Assembly (NCBI GenBank): GCA_937625935.1
Contig: OW569382.1
Coordinates: 248,001-312,000, forward strand
Source: Tetramitus jugosus
Taxonomy: Eukaryota > Protista > Heterolobosea
Direction: 5' to 3'
Length of the DNA stretch: 64,000 bases
How positions within the stretch are numbered: position 1 is the stretch's first letter; each line of letters begins with the position of its first letter. Below are positions 18,574-22,816 of the stretch, in pieces. The position numbers and the translations under genes are program-made. The notes beneath the pieces were generated by a model that saw only the letters and a program-made list of their open reading frames with translations, was not told the DNA's origin and did not search any database.

Positions 18574-20667
18574 TCACATTGGAAAAATTTTATTCTTGTA
18601 GAAGGACGACCGCGGCTCTTCGACTTTGCGTTTGAATATGGGAATGGCCTTCTTTTGTGCTTCAGAATCAGCTCCTATCGCTTCAAGATCTAGAAGATAG
18701 GTCTTCATTTTTCCCTTTCCTTTGATATCTGTCATTCCTCTCTCTTCAAACGGAAATTTGCCATTCAATGAGGTATGAGTTGTTTCTGAAATGTGTAGGT
18801 GGCCTGTGAGACCGTGTGATTGCATTCTGGAAGCCACATTGACCGTGTCCCCAAATATGTCGTACACATATTTCGTAGTGCCTACGACACCAGCTACGAT
18901 TGGGCCACTGTTTATACCTATTCTAATGCCAATGCTCAGACCTAATTGTTCTCCAATGATTTTGGTGACATTGTACATGCCAAGGGCTTGCTTCACTGCT
19001 CGTTCTGCATGATCTGACACTTGTACAGGTGCTCCTGCCACGGCCATGAAAACATTACCAATGGTTTTAATCTTTTCGACACCTACCTGTGAGCATACAT
19101 GATCGAATCCAGAGAATATGGTGTTCAGGAGGCGAACCATCTCTGTGGATTCTGCATTGAAATTGTACAATCCAGACATGTCACTGAACAAAACTGACAC
19201 TTCTGATATTGTATCTGCGATTAACATTCGACTGATGATAGATTCACTCTCTGTCTTCACGTGATCTGCTCCCGAGTCGCTCGTAAGTGTGGACTCATCC
19301 ACCTTTTTTGCCTCTTTTAACCGCTCATAGATCACCTCAGGTAACATGTTAAATACTAACCTCTCACTCTTTTCCTTCTCCTCCTTCACTCCCTTCTGCA
19401 ATCCCTCAATACCATCCAACAATAGATTTACCTGCTTGGCCATATTCCCTAGCTCATCTCTCCCTTTCAACACGACTCTCTGTCCCACATTCATCGTTTT
19501 GGCTATACTCTTCACTTCTTTAATAAGTCGTAGAGTTCTGCTTATCACAGCTCTCTCGATGAAGAGGATAAAGGAAACAGAGACAAGAATACCTATTAAC
19601 ACTAGCGATCCAAACGCGAGCAAAATGGATTTGACTGACAACTTGTAGATATCTCTTTCAATGTCAGCTCTCCAGATTGCCACGGGTTTGCCGAAAACGT
19701 CAGACACTATATTATACGCAGCTATCCGGTTCACTGACAACTGTTCCTCCATACCCTCACTACAAACCCTATTCAGCTCTTTACCAGACTTGAGTACACC
19801 AATGTATGAAGGAGAACTATTCTTCCACTCAGGAGTCGTAACAGATACAGAGGATACTCGATGATTCCCTTTTTGAACGTGGCTCCACATTGGCGAAGAG
19901 TGATTATATGGTTGCATAGTTATACAAAATCTGTTTCTTGAAGCAATGTTTTGTAGTTGTAACTCTCTTAGGATGGTAGCCATACAAAATAATCCATAAG
20001 AGTTTCCAACCATAGCTCCAGCTTGTATTGGAGCACAAGAGATCATGAGAATATCATCGCTACAATTGATGTATCCGCCACTCCTCGTAGTAATATCCTC
20101 CACTCCTTTCAAGAGAGGATGATTGATGTCCAGATGTTGCAATTCAGACGGTGGAGTGAGAGGTGTGCTATCTATGGAATCATAAGAAGAATGAAACAGC
20201 AAAGTTCCATTCCGGGCATAGAACAGGGCATAATCCACTCGAATCACCTTCATGAACGCGTCGCCTAGATTGTCCACACTGAATGTCTGAGCTTGAGTCA
20301 TATTGTTGCTATAGTTGAAATCATCCAGCAATTGCATGGTATCATCCCATGCTGCTATCGGAAGAGCAGTAGCCAACAAACTTTCTAAATCATCATACAG
20401 GTTCCGTATCAATCGTTGTGATACATTATTTGCTTTAGATACTTCCAACTTTGAGAAACTCTTTGCAAACACACTAACAATCACTATTGCAAAGGCACAA
20501 AACATTACAAGAAAAAGAAAGACCAATACAGTCGTTGTCTTGACTCTCAGACTCATTAACCGTCTCATGAATCTCTTTCTGAATTTCTCGCTTCTGGTAG
20601 ACAAGGAACCGAAACTGGTACTCCAACTGTTACTCCCATTGGGATATGAGTGTGTGGTATCTTTCAT
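18574..20667 (-). CDS. Receptor-type class III adenylyl cyclase (TM-CHASE4-like-TM-HAMP-cyclase), C2-like subunit
   Basis: AAWDDT sensor motif and HAMP (GRDELGNMAKQVN). The cyclase has KIKTIGN (second metal Asp replaced by Asn), YDIFGDTVNVASRM and KGKG. Confidence 0.9.
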   Translation of the reverse strand: MKDTTHSYPNGSNSWSTSFGSLSTRSEKFRKRFMRRLMSLRVKTTTVLVFLFLVMFCAFAIVIVSVFAKSFSKLEVSKANNVSQRLIRNLYDDLESLLATALPIAAWDDTMQLLDDFNYSNNMTQAQTFSVDNLGDAFMKVIRVDYALFYARNGTLLFHSSYDSIDSTPLTPPSELQHLDINHPLLKGVEDITTRSGGYINCSDDILMISCAPIQAGAMVGNSYGLFCMATILRELQLQNIASRNRFCITMQPYNHSSPMWSHVQKGNHRVSSVSVTTPEWKNSSPSYIGVLKSGKELNRVCSEGMEEQLSVNRIAAYNIVSDVFGKPVAIWRADIERDIYKLSVKSILLAFGSLVLIGILVSVSFILFIERAVISRTLRLIKEVKSIAKTMNVGQRVVLKGRDELGNMAKQVNLLLDGIEGLQKGVKEEKEKSERLVFNMLPEVIYERLKEAKKVDESTLTSDSGADHVKTESESIISRMLIADTISEVSVLFSDMSGLYNFNAESTEMVRLLNTIFSGFDHVCSQVGVEKIKTIGNVFMAVAGAPVQVSDHAERAVKQALGMYNVTKIIGEQLGLSIGIRIGINSGPIVAGVVGTTKYVYDIFGDTVNVASRMQSHGLTGHLHISETTHTSLNGKFPFEERGMTDIKGKGKMKTYLLDLEAIGADSEAQKKAIPIFKRKVEEPRSSFYKNKIFPM

Positions 20668-20771
20668 TTCTCGAGTTCTGTGATAGCGTAAATCATGAAA
20701 AGCCGTTGCCGGGTTTGTGGCGACATTTTGGAGGAAACATCCTCAAAAGGAAGAACACTCATTACACGAAA

Positions 20772-22816
20772 ATGAGCGACGAAGGAAGTATCATCGAGAA
20801 ACATATGACAGATAACGATGTAACTAATGAAGTTGAAAAAACTTCTTTCTTAAGAAGTATACGTTTCAAATCAATCATAGTTCTCGCAGTATTGCTCGTG
20901 TTAGTCTTCCTCGTATACTTGGCAATTATTCTAGGAATTTTTCCAAAGAGCTTTCAGGTGCTAGAGCATTCTCAATCAGGAGATACCATCATCAGAGTCC
21001 ATCGAGTTCTTTATGATGATCTTCGAAGTATTTTAAACGTTCTACTTCAGTACAGTCAATGGGATGGAACTCTGGAAGGTAAGAATTTTCCTCCCTTCTC
21101 TTTTCTTCATCTTGGAATACTCATCCCTTTGTGTCTACTCTAATAGTGATGGACAACTTTTCGAACTCTGCTGCCCATGATTATACGATGAACAACTTGA
21201 GTAACGAGTTCCTTAGTAGCGTGAGACTCGAATTTGCTATTGCCTATTTTCCTAATGGATCTTTAGCATTTGGTAGAGGCTATGATTATCTGAATGATAA
21301 GGACATCGAAATACCGCAAGAATTATCTCATTTGGAACCGGGAGTCCATCCGTTGATGATTAATACTTCTTATGCGGGTTCGAGAAGTGGAGGTTTACTA
21401 CATCTATCGGGTGGGAAAACACTAGCAGTAATAAGTGACCCTATTCAACAAACCATTTATGATGAGAATGGAAGAACGAACGGTCGGATGATATTTGCTA
21501 GAACTTTCAATTCTAATACAACAATGTTGGACTACGCCACCCGATCCAGAATATGTTTTTCAATGATCCCATATCAATCCAACGATTCTCGGTCTGTGCA
21601 ATTGAGAAGAGAGTCACTTGGAACCAAACCGGTTGTTGTAGACGTTTCTACTCCCCGGTGGAAAAACAATCGGGAATTCTTAATTGCACCACTCCATGAC
21701 ACTTCCAACAGGTATTGTTCGCCCACGGATTCAGAGAAAGGAAAACGAATCGCAAGTTACTCCCTGCTTCAAGATGTGTTTGGTGAACCAGTGTTATTCC
21801 TTCAATCTGACATCCCTCGAGATATAGTTAGATTAGAAATATCCAGCTTGTCCCTCGCGTTTGGAATGCTACTGCTCGTTATATGTATAGTTTCATTCGT
21901 CATCGCTCTATTCATTGAAATGGTTGTAGTCAAGCCTGTCACTGAATTAAATGGAAGGGTTAAGCAAATTGCAGCCAGGAGCGAAATGACTGATAGAGTA
22001 AAGGTAAAGAGCAGAGATGAACTTGGATCTCTGGCATTCGGTATAAACAGAATGTTAGACTCTCTGGAATTAGGTCACCAAGAACTGGAAAATCAGAGAG
22101 CTGAGAGCGAAAAACTACTCATGAACATGTTGCCAGAAGTTGTATCCAGAAAACTGAAAGCACAAGGACATTCACATCCATCATTTGTTGGAACTGTTGG
22201 TATTTCTGTGGAAGATAGTCTCTTGAACACTTACAATACCACTATTTTAATTGCCGAGTCCTTTCCCAACATTTCTGTCATTATCAGTGATATAGTAGGA
22301 TTCACTGCCCTTTCATCAAAAACAGAGTCACATAAGTTGGTATCCATATTGAACATGATGTTCTCTTCTTTTGACCAGGTATGTTCAAGAGTAGGAGTCG
22401 AAAAGATTAAGACTATTGGAGATGCATTTATGGCTGTCGCTGGAGCACCTATTCAAGTGGATGATCATGCTGATCGAGCTATAAAGCAAGCTCTAGGGAT
22501 GCTCGAGGTAATAGCTAGCATGAGAAAACAGTTGGATGTGGATGTTAACATTCGAGTAGGTATCAACAGTGGCCCCGCGGTTGCAGGTATCATTGGAACA
22601 ACAAAGTATGTCTATGATATTTTCGGAGATACTGTGACTGTAGCCTCGACAATGGAATCTCATAGTTTGCCTGGTTGTGTCCTTGTTTCGGAGTCAACTG
22701 TCTCCCTGGTTACAATACCCTATCCCTTTGAAAAGATGTCTCCTTTCCCAGTCAAAGACACAAAGGTGACAGGATATCTATTGAGACCGGAAGATATCTC
22801 CACAGTCAATGAGTGA
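20772..22816 (+). CDS. Receptor-type class III adenylyl cyclase (TM-CHASE4-like-TM-HAMP-cyclase), C1-like subunit; intron 21079-21146
   Basis: Paralog of the divergent neighbour. SDIVGFT and KIKTIGDAFM are intact, but it has DTVTVASTM (Asn and Arg lost) and no KGKG. Confidence 0.9.

What the first reader, a model, noticed from the sequence alone, without database searches (positions are those of the whole stretch)
18574..22816. Head-to-head adenylyl cyclase paralogs with reciprocal loss of catalytic residues: a predicted obligate heterodimeric receptor cyclase
Seen in sequence: two paralogous TM-CHASE4-like-TM-HAMP-cyclase genes diverge with only 104 bp between their ATGs. The minus gene has KIKTIGN (second metal-binding Asp replaced by Asn) and a degenerate SDMSGLY loop, but keeps the transition-state Asn/Arg (DTVNVASRM) and KGKG. 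The plus gene keeps both metal Asps (SDIVGFT, KTIGD) but has DTVTVASTM and no KGKG. Both keep the ATP-specifying Lys/Asp. Established: class III cyclases form active sites at the dimer interface, and exactly this split defines mammalian C1/C2 domains; soluble guanylyl cyclase alpha/beta subunits divide catalytic residues similarly. Inference: an independent subfunctionalisation produced a two-subunit receptor cyclase co-expressed from a bidirectional promoter. It could act as an AND gate or a composite ligand site built from two different sensor domains.
Basis: partly seen in the sequence, partly recalled or inferred. Interest (0 to 1): 0.85.

Follow-up and report, generated by a model that had tools for sequence, protein, structure and literature searches.

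The report
Two-gene split receptor adenylyl cyclase
Two back-to-back sister genes of a soil and groundwater amoeba-like protist each encode half of a cAMP-making active site, so they most likely work only as a mixed pair, an arrangement known from fungal light receptors but not described for this kind of sensor.

Summary
Two paralogous TM-CHASE4-TM-HAMP class III cyclase genes (about 40% identical) diverge from a 104-bp spacer. The plus gene also has a 68-nt intron.

- **Minus protein:** it has Asn at the second metal Asp and a degraded phosphate loop. It keeps Lys/Asp, Asn/Arg and KGKG.
- **Plus protein:** it keeps both metal Asps. It has Thr/Thr in place of Asn/Arg and has lost KGKG.
- **Together:** the pair can build exactly one complete ATP site.

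New evidence:
- The only full-length relatives among 1.84 billion representative proteins include a second head-to-head pair, 124 bp apart with different flanking genes. It lies on a contig from a metagenome sample that also holds this genome's closest transportin (61% identity). One member is C1-like (Thr/Lys, no KGKG); the other keeps the full set.
- Acrasis kona has a single, unpaired, full-set gene.
- Environmental strains keep the odd codons, with mostly synonymous changes and only in-frame indels.
- A heterodimer model passed its controls (0.83 vs 0.15). This does not distinguish hetero- from homodimers.

The best reading is a heterodimeric receptor adenylyl cyclase with one active site (confidence about 0.6). 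No biochemistry or clear co-expression data exist. The principle is already known from sGC, the fungal NeoR/RGC head-to-head pairs and Rv1625c D300A+R376A. This is therefore a convergent new variant, not a new kind.

The parts
18574..20667 (-). MINUS gene, 697 aa, intronless: TM1, extracellular CHASE4-like sensor, TM2, HAMP, transducer helix, class III cyclase domain. It is the C2-like subunit and supplies Lys/Asp, Asn/Arg and KGKG.
   Evidence: ORF; Pfam; AC9 alignment; residues
19915..20400 (-). CHASE4 domain of MINUS (residues 90-251)
   Evidence: PF05228, E 6.5e-15, 55.9 bits against a cut-off of 26.2
19405..19554 (-). HAMP region of MINUS (residues 372-421). It is below the Pfam threshold but aligns without gaps to the HAMP of PLUS.
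   Evidence: PF00672, 16.9 bits; pairwise alignment
18691..19215 (-). Cyclase catalytic domain of MINUS (residues 485-659)
   Evidence: PF00211, E 5.7e-53; PDB matches
19054..19056 (-). Codon AAT = Asn538, at the position of the second metal-binding Asp (Rv1625c D300 equivalent)
   Evidence: unchanged in the X3 and X12 contigs
20668..20771 (.). 104-bp divergent intergenic spacer, a presumed shared promoter region
   Evidence: the relative has a 124-bp spacer in the same arrangement
20772..21078 (+). PLUS gene exon 1: cytosolic N-tail, TM1 and the start of the sensor, up to the WDGTLE motif
   Evidence: 42% identity to the P0028 N-terminus, E 2e-23
21079..21146 (+). PLUS intron, 68 nt, GTAAG...TAG, phase 1
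   Evidence: Read from the sequence; the frame is restored and homology continues across it; no spliced read was found
21147..22816 (+). PLUS gene exon 2: remainder of the CHASE4-like sensor, TM2, HAMP, transducer helix and cyclase domain. It is the C1-like subunit and supplies both metal Asps and an intact phosphate loop.
22253..22783 (+). Cyclase catalytic domain of PLUS
   Evidence: PF00211, E 1.5e-48. It scores better against AC9 C1 (103.8 bits) than C2 (65.4 bits).
22637..22651 (+). Codons ACT (Thr498) and ACA (Thr502), at the positions of the transition-state Asn and Arg
   Evidence: kept in the X3 contig

Best explanation
The two genes encode the two subunits of one heterodimeric receptor adenylyl cyclase.

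**Shown**
- Each subunit is a single-pass-in, single-pass-out membrane protein. It has an extracellular CHASE4-like sensor, a HAMP domain, a transducer helix and one class III catalytic domain.

**Inferred**
- Class III domains form active sites across the dimer interface.
- PLUS supplies the two metal-binding Asps and the phosphate loop.
- MINUS supplies the adenine-specifying Lys/Asp, the transition-state Asn/Arg and the KGKG hairpin. The heterodimer therefore has one competent ATP-to-cAMP site.
- The mirror site (MINUS Asp/Asn plus PLUS Lys/Asp/Thr/Thr) is catalytically dead, as in mammalian C1/C2 and sGC alpha/beta.
- Homodimers should be inactive (PLUS) or strongly impaired (MINUS).
- An inverted duplication of a homodimeric ancestor, of the kind still found as a single gene in Acrasis kona, produced the pair before this organism and its metagenomic relative diverged.
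- One catalytic domain became C1-like first. In this lineage the other then lost its metal site.
- Divergent transcription from the short spacer would keep the subunits in balance.
For: **Residues and modelling**
- Complementary residue pattern, verified against AC9 C1/C2.
- Degeneration is confined to the elements of one of the two potential sites.
- The canonical 44-residue spacing between the metal positions is kept in PLUS. It is shortened to 42 in MINUS.
- The register from TM2 through HAMP to the transducer helix is gapless between the two proteins.
- The heterodimer model of transducer helix plus catalytic domains scored ipSAE 0.83 against a best control of 0.15. The runs share at least 85% of contacts and the partner's pLDDT is at least 84. 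The mark was reached by 51 of 78 solved complexes and 2 of 108 mismatched pairs. Contacts run through the KIKTIG and GTTKYVYD strands.

**Relatives**
- An exhaustive search found only four full-length relatives. Two of them, P0027 and P0028, lie head-to-head 124 bp apart on one eukaryotic metagenome contig with no shared flanking genes.
- P0027 is C1-like (Asp, Asp, Thr, Lys, no KGKG). P0028 has the full set.
- The four cyclase domains form a clade (99/97) apart from the unpaired full-set genes of Acrasis kona and P0030.
- MINUS and PLUS as sisters, meaning two separate duplications, is disfavoured (AU p 0.035).

**Selection**
- In the cyclase domains, environmental variants are 6 synonymous to 2 non-synonymous (MINUS) and 6 to 3 (PLUS). 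All four indels seen are in frame.

**Uniqueness in the genome**
- No other single-domain class IIIa-like cyclase in the genome has a complementary defect.

**Experimental precedents**
- Rv1625c D300A and R376A are each inactive, and activity returns when they are co-expressed (PMC4821796).
- NeoR/RGC(a) pairs are divergently transcribed and active only when co-expressed (PMC10622942).
Against: - There is no enzymatic, binding or clean expression evidence.
- The structural pass is expected for any two class III domains, and the tool warns that it cannot tell which family member binds. It does not rank the heterodimer over homodimers.
- Asn can still ligate Mg/Mn weakly, so MINUS homodimers may keep some activity.
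- Both subunits, and both proteins of the relative, have Thr where mammalian C1 has the phosphate-binding Arg484. Even the composite site is therefore not fully canonical.
- In the relative, one partner has all six residues, so heterodimerisation need not be obligatory in the family.
- This genome holds many catalytically degenerate cyclase domains used in other receptors, so loss of activity is common here.
- Short divergent spacers are ordinary in this compact genome.
- Contigs from RNA libraries touch both genes, but one runs 9 nt into the intron and no splice joint was seen.
Confidence: 0.6

Rival explanations
1. This is an asymmetric regulator model. MINUS is the working enzyme as a weakened homodimer, with Asn538 still helping to hold a metal. 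PLUS is a catalytically dead paralog that titrates or modulates it, acting as a dominant-negative or sensitising subunit rather than an essential half of the active site.
For: - In the relative, the partner whose cyclase domain resembles that of MINUS (P0028) keeps all six residues and could act alone.
- In NeoR/RGC the isolated RgRGC1 cyclase domain is active as a homodimer while NeoR's is not (PMC10622942).
- D to N is a conservative change.
Against: - The degradation in MINUS goes beyond D to N: the phosphate loop reads SDMSGLY and there is a 2-residue deletion.
- PLUS keeps both Asps and a perfect SDIVGFT loop under purifying selection. This would be pointless in a mere decoy.
- Rv1625c D300A is inactive alone.
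Confidence: 0.15
2. Both proteins are pseudo-cyclases. No cAMP is made, and the cyclase folds serve only as dimerisation or signal-relay modules, or as nucleotide-binding sensors. This would resemble the many degenerate cyclase domains elsewhere in this genome.
For: - One search shows a large family of cyclase domains (open frames of about 670-770 aa) that lack the metal Asps, and several domains that lack nearly everything.
- All four pair-clade proteins lack the Arg484 equivalent.
Against: - The losses are strictly complementary, not random.
- Every residue needed for one composite site is retained in two organisms.
- The catalytic motifs GVEKIKTIG and GTTKYVYDIFGDTV are identical in all four proteins.
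Confidence: 0.15
3. Partnering is promiscuous. Each protein pairs with other cyclase paralogs of the genome rather than with its neighbour, and the adjacency merely reflects a tandem inverted duplication.
For: The genome has at least 52 cyclase-domain matches, including full-set single-domain enzymes.
Against: - The other class IIIa-like paralogs are very distant (branch length 4) and have other architectures.
- The other CHASE4-HAMP paralogs carry PAS-RGS outputs, not cyclases.
- The head-to-head pair is kept in a distant relative while the flanking genes changed.
Confidence: 0.05
4. The substitutions are unconserved decay or assembly errors in genes on their way to becoming pseudogenes.
For: None beyond the substitutions themselves.
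Against: - The same codons occur in independent metagenome contigs.
- Reading frames are intact and indels are in frame only.
- Synonymous changes are in excess in the cyclase domains.
- The C1-like pattern is shared with the relative.
Confidence: 0.03

Closest known systems
Chytrid heterodimeric rhodopsin-guanylyl cyclases, NeoR/RGC(a) (Broser et al., PNAS 2023, PMC10622942)
   Same: - Two paralogous single-domain receptor cyclases lie on opposite strands and are transcribed divergently.
- They arose by duplication and inversion of a homodimeric ancestor.
- They function only as heterodimers.
- The cyclase moiety decides between homo- and heterodimerisation.
   Different: - The sensor there is an 8-TM rhodopsin (light) and the product is cGMP.
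- Here the sensor is an extracellular CHASE4-like domain plus HAMP, and the Lys/Asp pair specifies ATP.
- The lineage differs (fungi against a heterolobosean-like protist), so the origin is independent.
- Function is shown there and only predicted here.
Mammalian membrane adenylyl cyclases (C1/C2 pseudo-heterodimer) and soluble guanylyl cyclase alpha/beta
   Same: - One competent site and one degenerate site at the domain interface.
- One domain supplies the metal Asps; the other supplies the base-specifying and transition-state residues.
- The PLUS domain scores better against AC9 C1. The MINUS domain retains the C2 motifs GDTVNVASRM and KGKG.
   Different: - In tmACs the two halves are fused in one 12-TM polypeptide. 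This genome also has such fused enzymes.
- sGC is soluble and senses through haem.
- Here both halves keep the Lys/Asp pair, and both lack the Arg484 equivalent.
Mycobacterium tuberculosis Rv1625c engineered complementation (D300A + R376A)
   Same: The positions are the same as the natural changes here: the second metal Asp in one subunit and the transition-state Arg in the other. The mutants are inactive alone, and activity is restored when they are co-expressed (PMC4821796).
   Different: - That system uses laboratory mutants of a natural homodimer with a 6-TM anchor.
- Here the split is natural, and Asn or Thr replace the residues rather than Ala.
Bacterial CHASE4-HAMP signalling proteins and CHASE4-HAMP-cyclases (e.g. 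P0065, P0003)
   Same: - Same sensor-HAMP module: profile E 2.5e-51 to P0003.
- P0065 aligns over residues 38-659 with the same domain order and a full catalytic set.
   Different: - Those proteins appear to be single genes, presumably homodimeric.
- Their outputs are often PAS/GGDEF/histidine kinase.
- Their organisms are not named in the sources.

Membership tests
Class III nucleotidyl cyclase (PF00211) | Significant match to the catalytic-domain profile | tested here: met
   MINUS 179.7 bits and PLUS 165.3 bits, against a cut-off of 21.9. PDB hits to AC9, AC5, AC8 and Rv1625c.
Class III nucleotidyl cyclase (PF00211) | All six canonical catalytic residues in one chain, giving homodimer competence | tested here: not met
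   MINUS has Asn538 for the second metal Asp. PLUS has Thr498/Thr502 for Asn/Arg.
Heterodimeric C1/C2-type cyclase (tmAC, sGC, NeoR/RGC) | Complementary half-sites that together give one full set of residues | tested here: met
   PLUS D382/D426 together with MINUS K534/D603/N610/R614/K649-K651.
Heterodimeric C1/C2-type cyclase (tmAC, sGC, NeoR/RGC) | Physical heterodimerisation of the two subunits | tested here: inconclusive
   The model passed (ipSAE 0.83 against a best control of 0.15; at least 85% of contacts shared between runs; partner pLDDT at least 84). The mark was reached by 51 of 78 solved complexes and 2 of 108 mismatched pairs. The test cannot separate hetero- from homodimers within a family that has solved dimers.
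Heterodimeric C1/C2-type cyclase (tmAC, sGC, NeoR/RGC) | Activity only, or mainly, when both subunits are present | not testable with these tools
   This needs an enzyme assay or cya complementation.
Heterodimeric C1/C2-type cyclase (tmAC, sGC, NeoR/RGC) | Co-expression of the two subunits | tested here: inconclusive
   Contigs from three soil metatranscriptome libraries lie on both genes. No joint or transcript ends were seen, and DNA carry-over cannot be excluded.
Adenylyl (not guanylyl) cyclase specificity | Lys and Asp at the base-recognising positions | tested here: met
   K534/D603 in MINUS and K422/D491 in PLUS. That Lys/Asp specifies ATP is established knowledge of class III cyclases.
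CHASE4 extracellular sensor (PF05228) | Profile match located between two transmembrane helices | tested here: met
   MINUS 55.9 bits against a cut-off of 26.2. PLUS exon 2 alone gives 22.2 bits (the start of the domain is in exon 1), but it is 36% identical to the MINUS sensor. Hydrophobic helices flank both sensors.
HAMP domain (PF00672) | Profile match directly after TM2 | tested here: met
   PLUS 36.6 bits against a cut-off of 25. MINUS gives only 16.9 bits but aligns without gaps to PLUS.
Cyclase transducer element (class IIIa/b) | Conserved helix immediately upstream of the catalytic domain | tested here: inconclusive
   The SE.L..NMLPEV...LK motif is conserved in all six family members. 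There is a weak HNOBA C-terminal match in PLUS (E 0.052). No dedicated profile was available; the motif was recognised from memory of Ziegler et al. 2017.

The most novel reading that the evidence does not exclude
The pair is an obligate two-sensor receptor adenylyl cyclase that evolved convergently with the fungal NeoR/RGC pairs, and its history is caught in steps.

- **Ancestor:** a single full-set gene, as in Acrasis.
- **Intermediate:** a head-to-head pair with one C1-like partner and one full-set partner, as in the metagenomic relative.
- **Present state:** fully reciprocal loss in this organism.

The sensor halves and the catalytic halves pair up differently between the two organisms. 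This would be explained by an inversion between the inverted paralogs that swapped their 5' halves. Such a swap is nearly neutral only if both proteins always sit in the same complex.

The dead mirror site keeps Lys/Asp and could be an allosteric nucleotide pocket.
Probability: 0.25. Interest if true: 0.72.

Novelty: new variant of a known kind. Interest (0 to 1): 0.55.

Why it matters
It would be a second, independent natural case of a receptor cyclase split into two divergently transcribed subunit genes. This one would have chemical (CHASE4-type) sensors rather than light sensors, and cAMP as its output.

Two different extracellular sensors feeding one active site is a simple architecture for coincidence detection or for a composite ligand site. 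The ligands of CHASE4 domains are largely unknown.

The relative with one still-complete partner, and Acrasis with a single gene, offer a natural series. It could be used to test how homodimeric enzymes become obligate heterodimers.

The pair is small and intronless or nearly so. It can be tested directly in E. coli cya strains.

Tried and rejected
**Searches for further relatives**
1. The word-index homolog searches found no further pairs. One search was swamped by generic cyclase hits. One search recovered only P0030 and bacterial CHASE4 proteins.
2. The metagenome contig scan with the family alignment returned 80 loci that match only the transducer helix plus cyclase domain. They look like HAMP-cyclases of the bacterial type. 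No new pair was found, and the known relative's contig was not among the loci kept.

**Gene structure and context**
3. Shared intron positions with the Acrasis gene were checked. The introns lie at different places, so they carry no information.
4. Synteny around the pair was checked. None of the five flanking genes of L051 has a match in the window.

**Expression**
5. A splice joint or transcript ends were sought in RNA libraries, and none was found. One RNA-library contig runs 9 nt into the intron. Expression therefore remains weakly supported.

**Orthology**
6. Orthology of the partners could not be settled. The whole-length tree gives (MINUS,P0027)(PLUS,P0028) with 83-91% support, and the alternative is not rejected (AU p 0.058). 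The partition trees conflict and neither is significant (AU p about 0.09).

**Readings rejected**
7. The C11 locus (L006/L007) looked like a second split pair. It is one multi-exon gene of the 12-TM C1-C2 type.
8. The pseudogene or sequencing-error reading was rejected.

9. A homodimer-versus-heterodimer modelling comparison could not be run, because only one complex job is allowed.
10. The spliced PLUS protein was never joined.

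
Full report
**What is there**

The window belongs to a 26.35-Mb, 56-contig eukaryotic assembly with about 41% GC. Neighbouring genes are eukaryotic in type.

The closest named relatives of its transportin-1 are Acrasis kona, Willaertia magna and Naegleria, at about 47% identity. 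An unnamed protein from JGI sample 3300062347 is 61% identical. Near-identical DNA occurs in groundwater, soil and hot-spring metagenomes. The organism is therefore a free-living protist, probably heterolobosean-like. That placement is only weakly supported, because animal transportins score almost as high.

The minus gene is one ORF at 18574..20667 (697 aa). The plus gene starts at ATG 20772 and has a 68-nt phase-1 intron at 21079-21146 (GTAAG...TAG). It ends at 22816. Exon 1 aligns to the N-terminus of relative P0028 right up to the splice point.

All searches and alignments used exon 1 and exon 2 separately by reference.

The spacer between the two ATGs is 104 bp. An in-frame ATG at 20646 would overlap the minus start. 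Homology favours 20772.

**Domains and residues**

Pfam finds CHASE4, HAMP and Guanylate_cyc in both proteins, and hydrophobic helices flank the sensor. The proteins are 40% identical along their whole length.

Alignment to the solved AC9 structure places the catalytic residues:
- **MINUS** keeps the first metal Asp (D496) but has Asn538 at the second. Its phosphate loop is degraded (SDMSGLY) and lies 2 residues closer to the second metal position than is canonical. It keeps K534, D603, N610, R614 and KGKG.
- **PLUS** has a textbook SDIVGFT loop with D382 and D426 at the canonical spacing of 44, plus K422 and D491. It has Thr498 and Thr502 for the transition-state Asn and Arg, and VKDTK for KGKG.
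- PLUS scores much better against C1 than against C2 of AC9 (103.8 vs 65.4 bits). MINUS scores equally against both.

Every change lies in the elements of one of the two potential interface sites, and the other site is complete. By a rough count this happens by chance with p about 0.03 here. Combined with the relative, p is about 0.005.

**Are the substitutions real and maintained?**

An independent groundwater metagenome (X3) covers both cyclase domains at about 99% identity, and none of its differences touches a key codon.

Variants listed by the read-laying tool, over four environmental runs:

| Region | MINUS (synonymous : non-synonymous) | PLUS (synonymous : non-synonymous) |
|---|---|---|
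| Whole gene | 8 : 8 | 11 : 12 |
| Cyclase domain | 6 : 2 | 6 : 3 |

The four indels are all multiples of three. Both genes are therefore under purifying selection, and neither is decaying.

Contigs from three soil metatranscriptome libraries lie on both genes. No splice joint or transcript ends were seen, and DNA carry-over cannot be excluded. Co-expression is only weakly supported.

**Relatives**

An exhaustive HMMER search of 1.84 billion representative proteins found only four full-length relatives.
- **P0027 (657 aa) and P0028 (713 aa)** are encoded head-to-head, 124 bp apart, on one 12.4-kb contig of JGI sample 3300062347. This is the sample that holds the 61%-identical transportin. The contig carries eukaryotic genes (ORC5, retroelement parts). 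None of its flanking genes is found in the window, so the pair itself is the conserved unit.
- **P0027** keeps both Asps but has Thr and Lys for Asn and Arg and has no KGKG, so it is C1-like. **P0028** keeps all six residues.
- **P0029** is an Acrasis kona gene. It has three exons, no divergent partner and a full catalytic set.
- **P0030** is a fragment on a 3.1-kb contig.

The four paired cyclase domains form a clade (99/97) separate from Acrasis and P0030. MINUS and PLUS as sisters is disfavoured (AU p 0.035). The inverted duplication therefore most likely predates the split of the two organisms.

**An unresolved mosaic**

The sensor part, including exon 1, groups MINUS with P0027 and PLUS with P0028 (support 81-87%). 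The cyclase part groups MINUS with P0028 (65/74) and PLUS with P0027 (83/85).

Two-against-two informative columns:

| Part of the protein | MINUS~P0027 / PLUS~P0028 | MINUS~P0028 / PLUS~P0027 |
|---|---|---|
| N-terminal (sensor, HAMP) | 18 | 3 |
| C-terminal (transducer helix, cyclase) | 3 | 6 |

Fisher's test gives p 0.008, but the boundary was chosen at the domain junction after looking at the data. The AU tests on each partition are not significant (p about 0.09).

Two explanations are open. An inversion between the inverted paralogs may have swapped their 5' halves in one lineage. Alternatively, the catalytic domains may have converged. I leave this open.

If the cyclase grouping reflects descent, the C1-like state (Asn to Thr) is old. 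The Asp-to-Asn loss in MINUS would then be a later, lineage-specific step that completed the reciprocal split.

**Mechanism**

Class III cyclases build their sites across the dimer interface, which is established knowledge. The natural changes sit at positions whose alanine mutants in Rv1625c (D300A, R376A) are inactive singly and regain activity when co-expressed (PMC4821796).

A model of the two cytosolic parts with ATP and Mg gave ipSAE 0.83 against a best control of 0.15. The runs share at least 85% of contacts and the partner's pLDDT is at least 84. The mark was reached by 51 of 78 solved complexes and 2 of 108 mismatched pairs. The interface runs through the transducer helices and the KIKTIG and GTTKYVYD strands. 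This shows likeness to solved cyclase dimers. It does not show a preference for the heterodimer.

The best explanation is a heterodimeric receptor adenylyl cyclase with one active site and one dead mirror site (confidence about 0.6). The rivals are:
- a decoy or regulator role for PLUS, with a weak MINUS homodimer;
- two pseudo-cyclases;
- promiscuous partners;
- decay.

**Context in the genome**

The genome has at least 52 cyclase-domain matches. They include:
- fused C1-C2 proteins;
- a 12-TM-type enzyme;
- full-set single-domain enzymes;
- a large family lacking the metal Asps.

No other single-domain enzyme complements MINUS or PLUS. The same CHASE4-HAMP sensor is also fused to PAS-RGS outputs in about ten paralogs.

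**Comparison with what is known, and novelty**

The principle is known from three systems: mammalian C1/C2, sGC alpha/beta and, most closely, the chytrid NeoR/RGC(a) receptors. The chytrid receptors are paralogs on opposite strands and are transcribed divergently. They derive from a duplication and reverse reintegration, and they are active only as heterodimers (PMC10622942).

The present pair differs in its sensor (extracellular CHASE4 plus HAMP), its predicted product (cAMP) and its lineage, so it is a convergent case. Two literature searches did not surface a description of such a pair; neither asked for it specifically.

I rate it a new variant of a known kind, with moderate interest (0.55). 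It is well supported as an observation, directly testable, and it has a natural evolutionary series. It is not conceptually new and has no functional data.

Noticed in passing
G000:C31:100363-101322, C3:73240-74499, C43:198150-199325, C14:109903-111063, C30:284225-285469, C45:128631-129812, C11:214628-232694 (three copies), C10:222943-224305: About ten paralogs carry the same CHASE4-like sensor plus HAMP without a cyclase. Of the three checked, two end in an RGS domain (one of them via PAS) and one showed only a weak PAS match. A bacterial-type extracellular sensor therefore appears to be wired to eukaryotic G-protein regulation. A metagenomic homolog (P0147) has the same architecture.
   Followed up: partly
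G000 loci L031-L041, L047, L023, L036, L037, L039 (e.g. C34:326953-338601, C44:73376-102357): There is a large family of proteins (open frames of about 670-770 aa) whose cyclase domains lack both metal Asps but keep Asn/Arg and KGK. They are half-site, C2-like domains. Some lie in clusters, including a head-to-head pair on C34 in which both members are C2-like and so not complementary.
   Followed up: partly
G000:C1:29947-32175, C33:369219-371288, C11:199638-201746: Three genes have a C1-like and a C2-like cyclase domain in one polypeptide: two 1212-1214-aa open frames and one multi-exon gene with hydrophobic blocks between the domains (12-TM type). The genome therefore holds fused as well as split solutions to the same enzyme design.
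   Followed up: partly
window 18574-22816 compared with L051:3735-7974: The sensor halves and the catalytic halves of the two pairs give opposite orthology (informative columns 18:3 in the N-terminal part against 3:6 in the C-terminal part, Fisher p 0.008). Either an inversion between the inverted paralogs swapped their 5' halves, or the catalytic domains converged. AU tests are not significant.
   Followed up: partly
window 19283-19304, 18602, 20834: Environmental strains carry in-frame indels. There is a 21-nt deletion in the linker between the transducer helix and the cyclase domain of MINUS. There is an AGG insertion in the MINUS C-terminal tail. There is a 9-nt insertion in the PLUS N-terminal tail. 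All lie in poorly conserved segments.
   Followed up: partly
window 20646-20771: An in-frame ATG at 20646 upstream of the PLUS start would extend its ORF by 42 codons and overlap the MINUS start codon by 22 nt. Homology to P0027/P0028 favours the ATG at 20772.
   Followed up: partly
L051:1-1633: In the relative, genes with zf-CCHC and phage-integrase-type domains lie about 2.1 kb beyond the 3' end of P0028, past the ORC5-like gene. They are probably parts of a retroelement or another mobile element.
   Followed up: no
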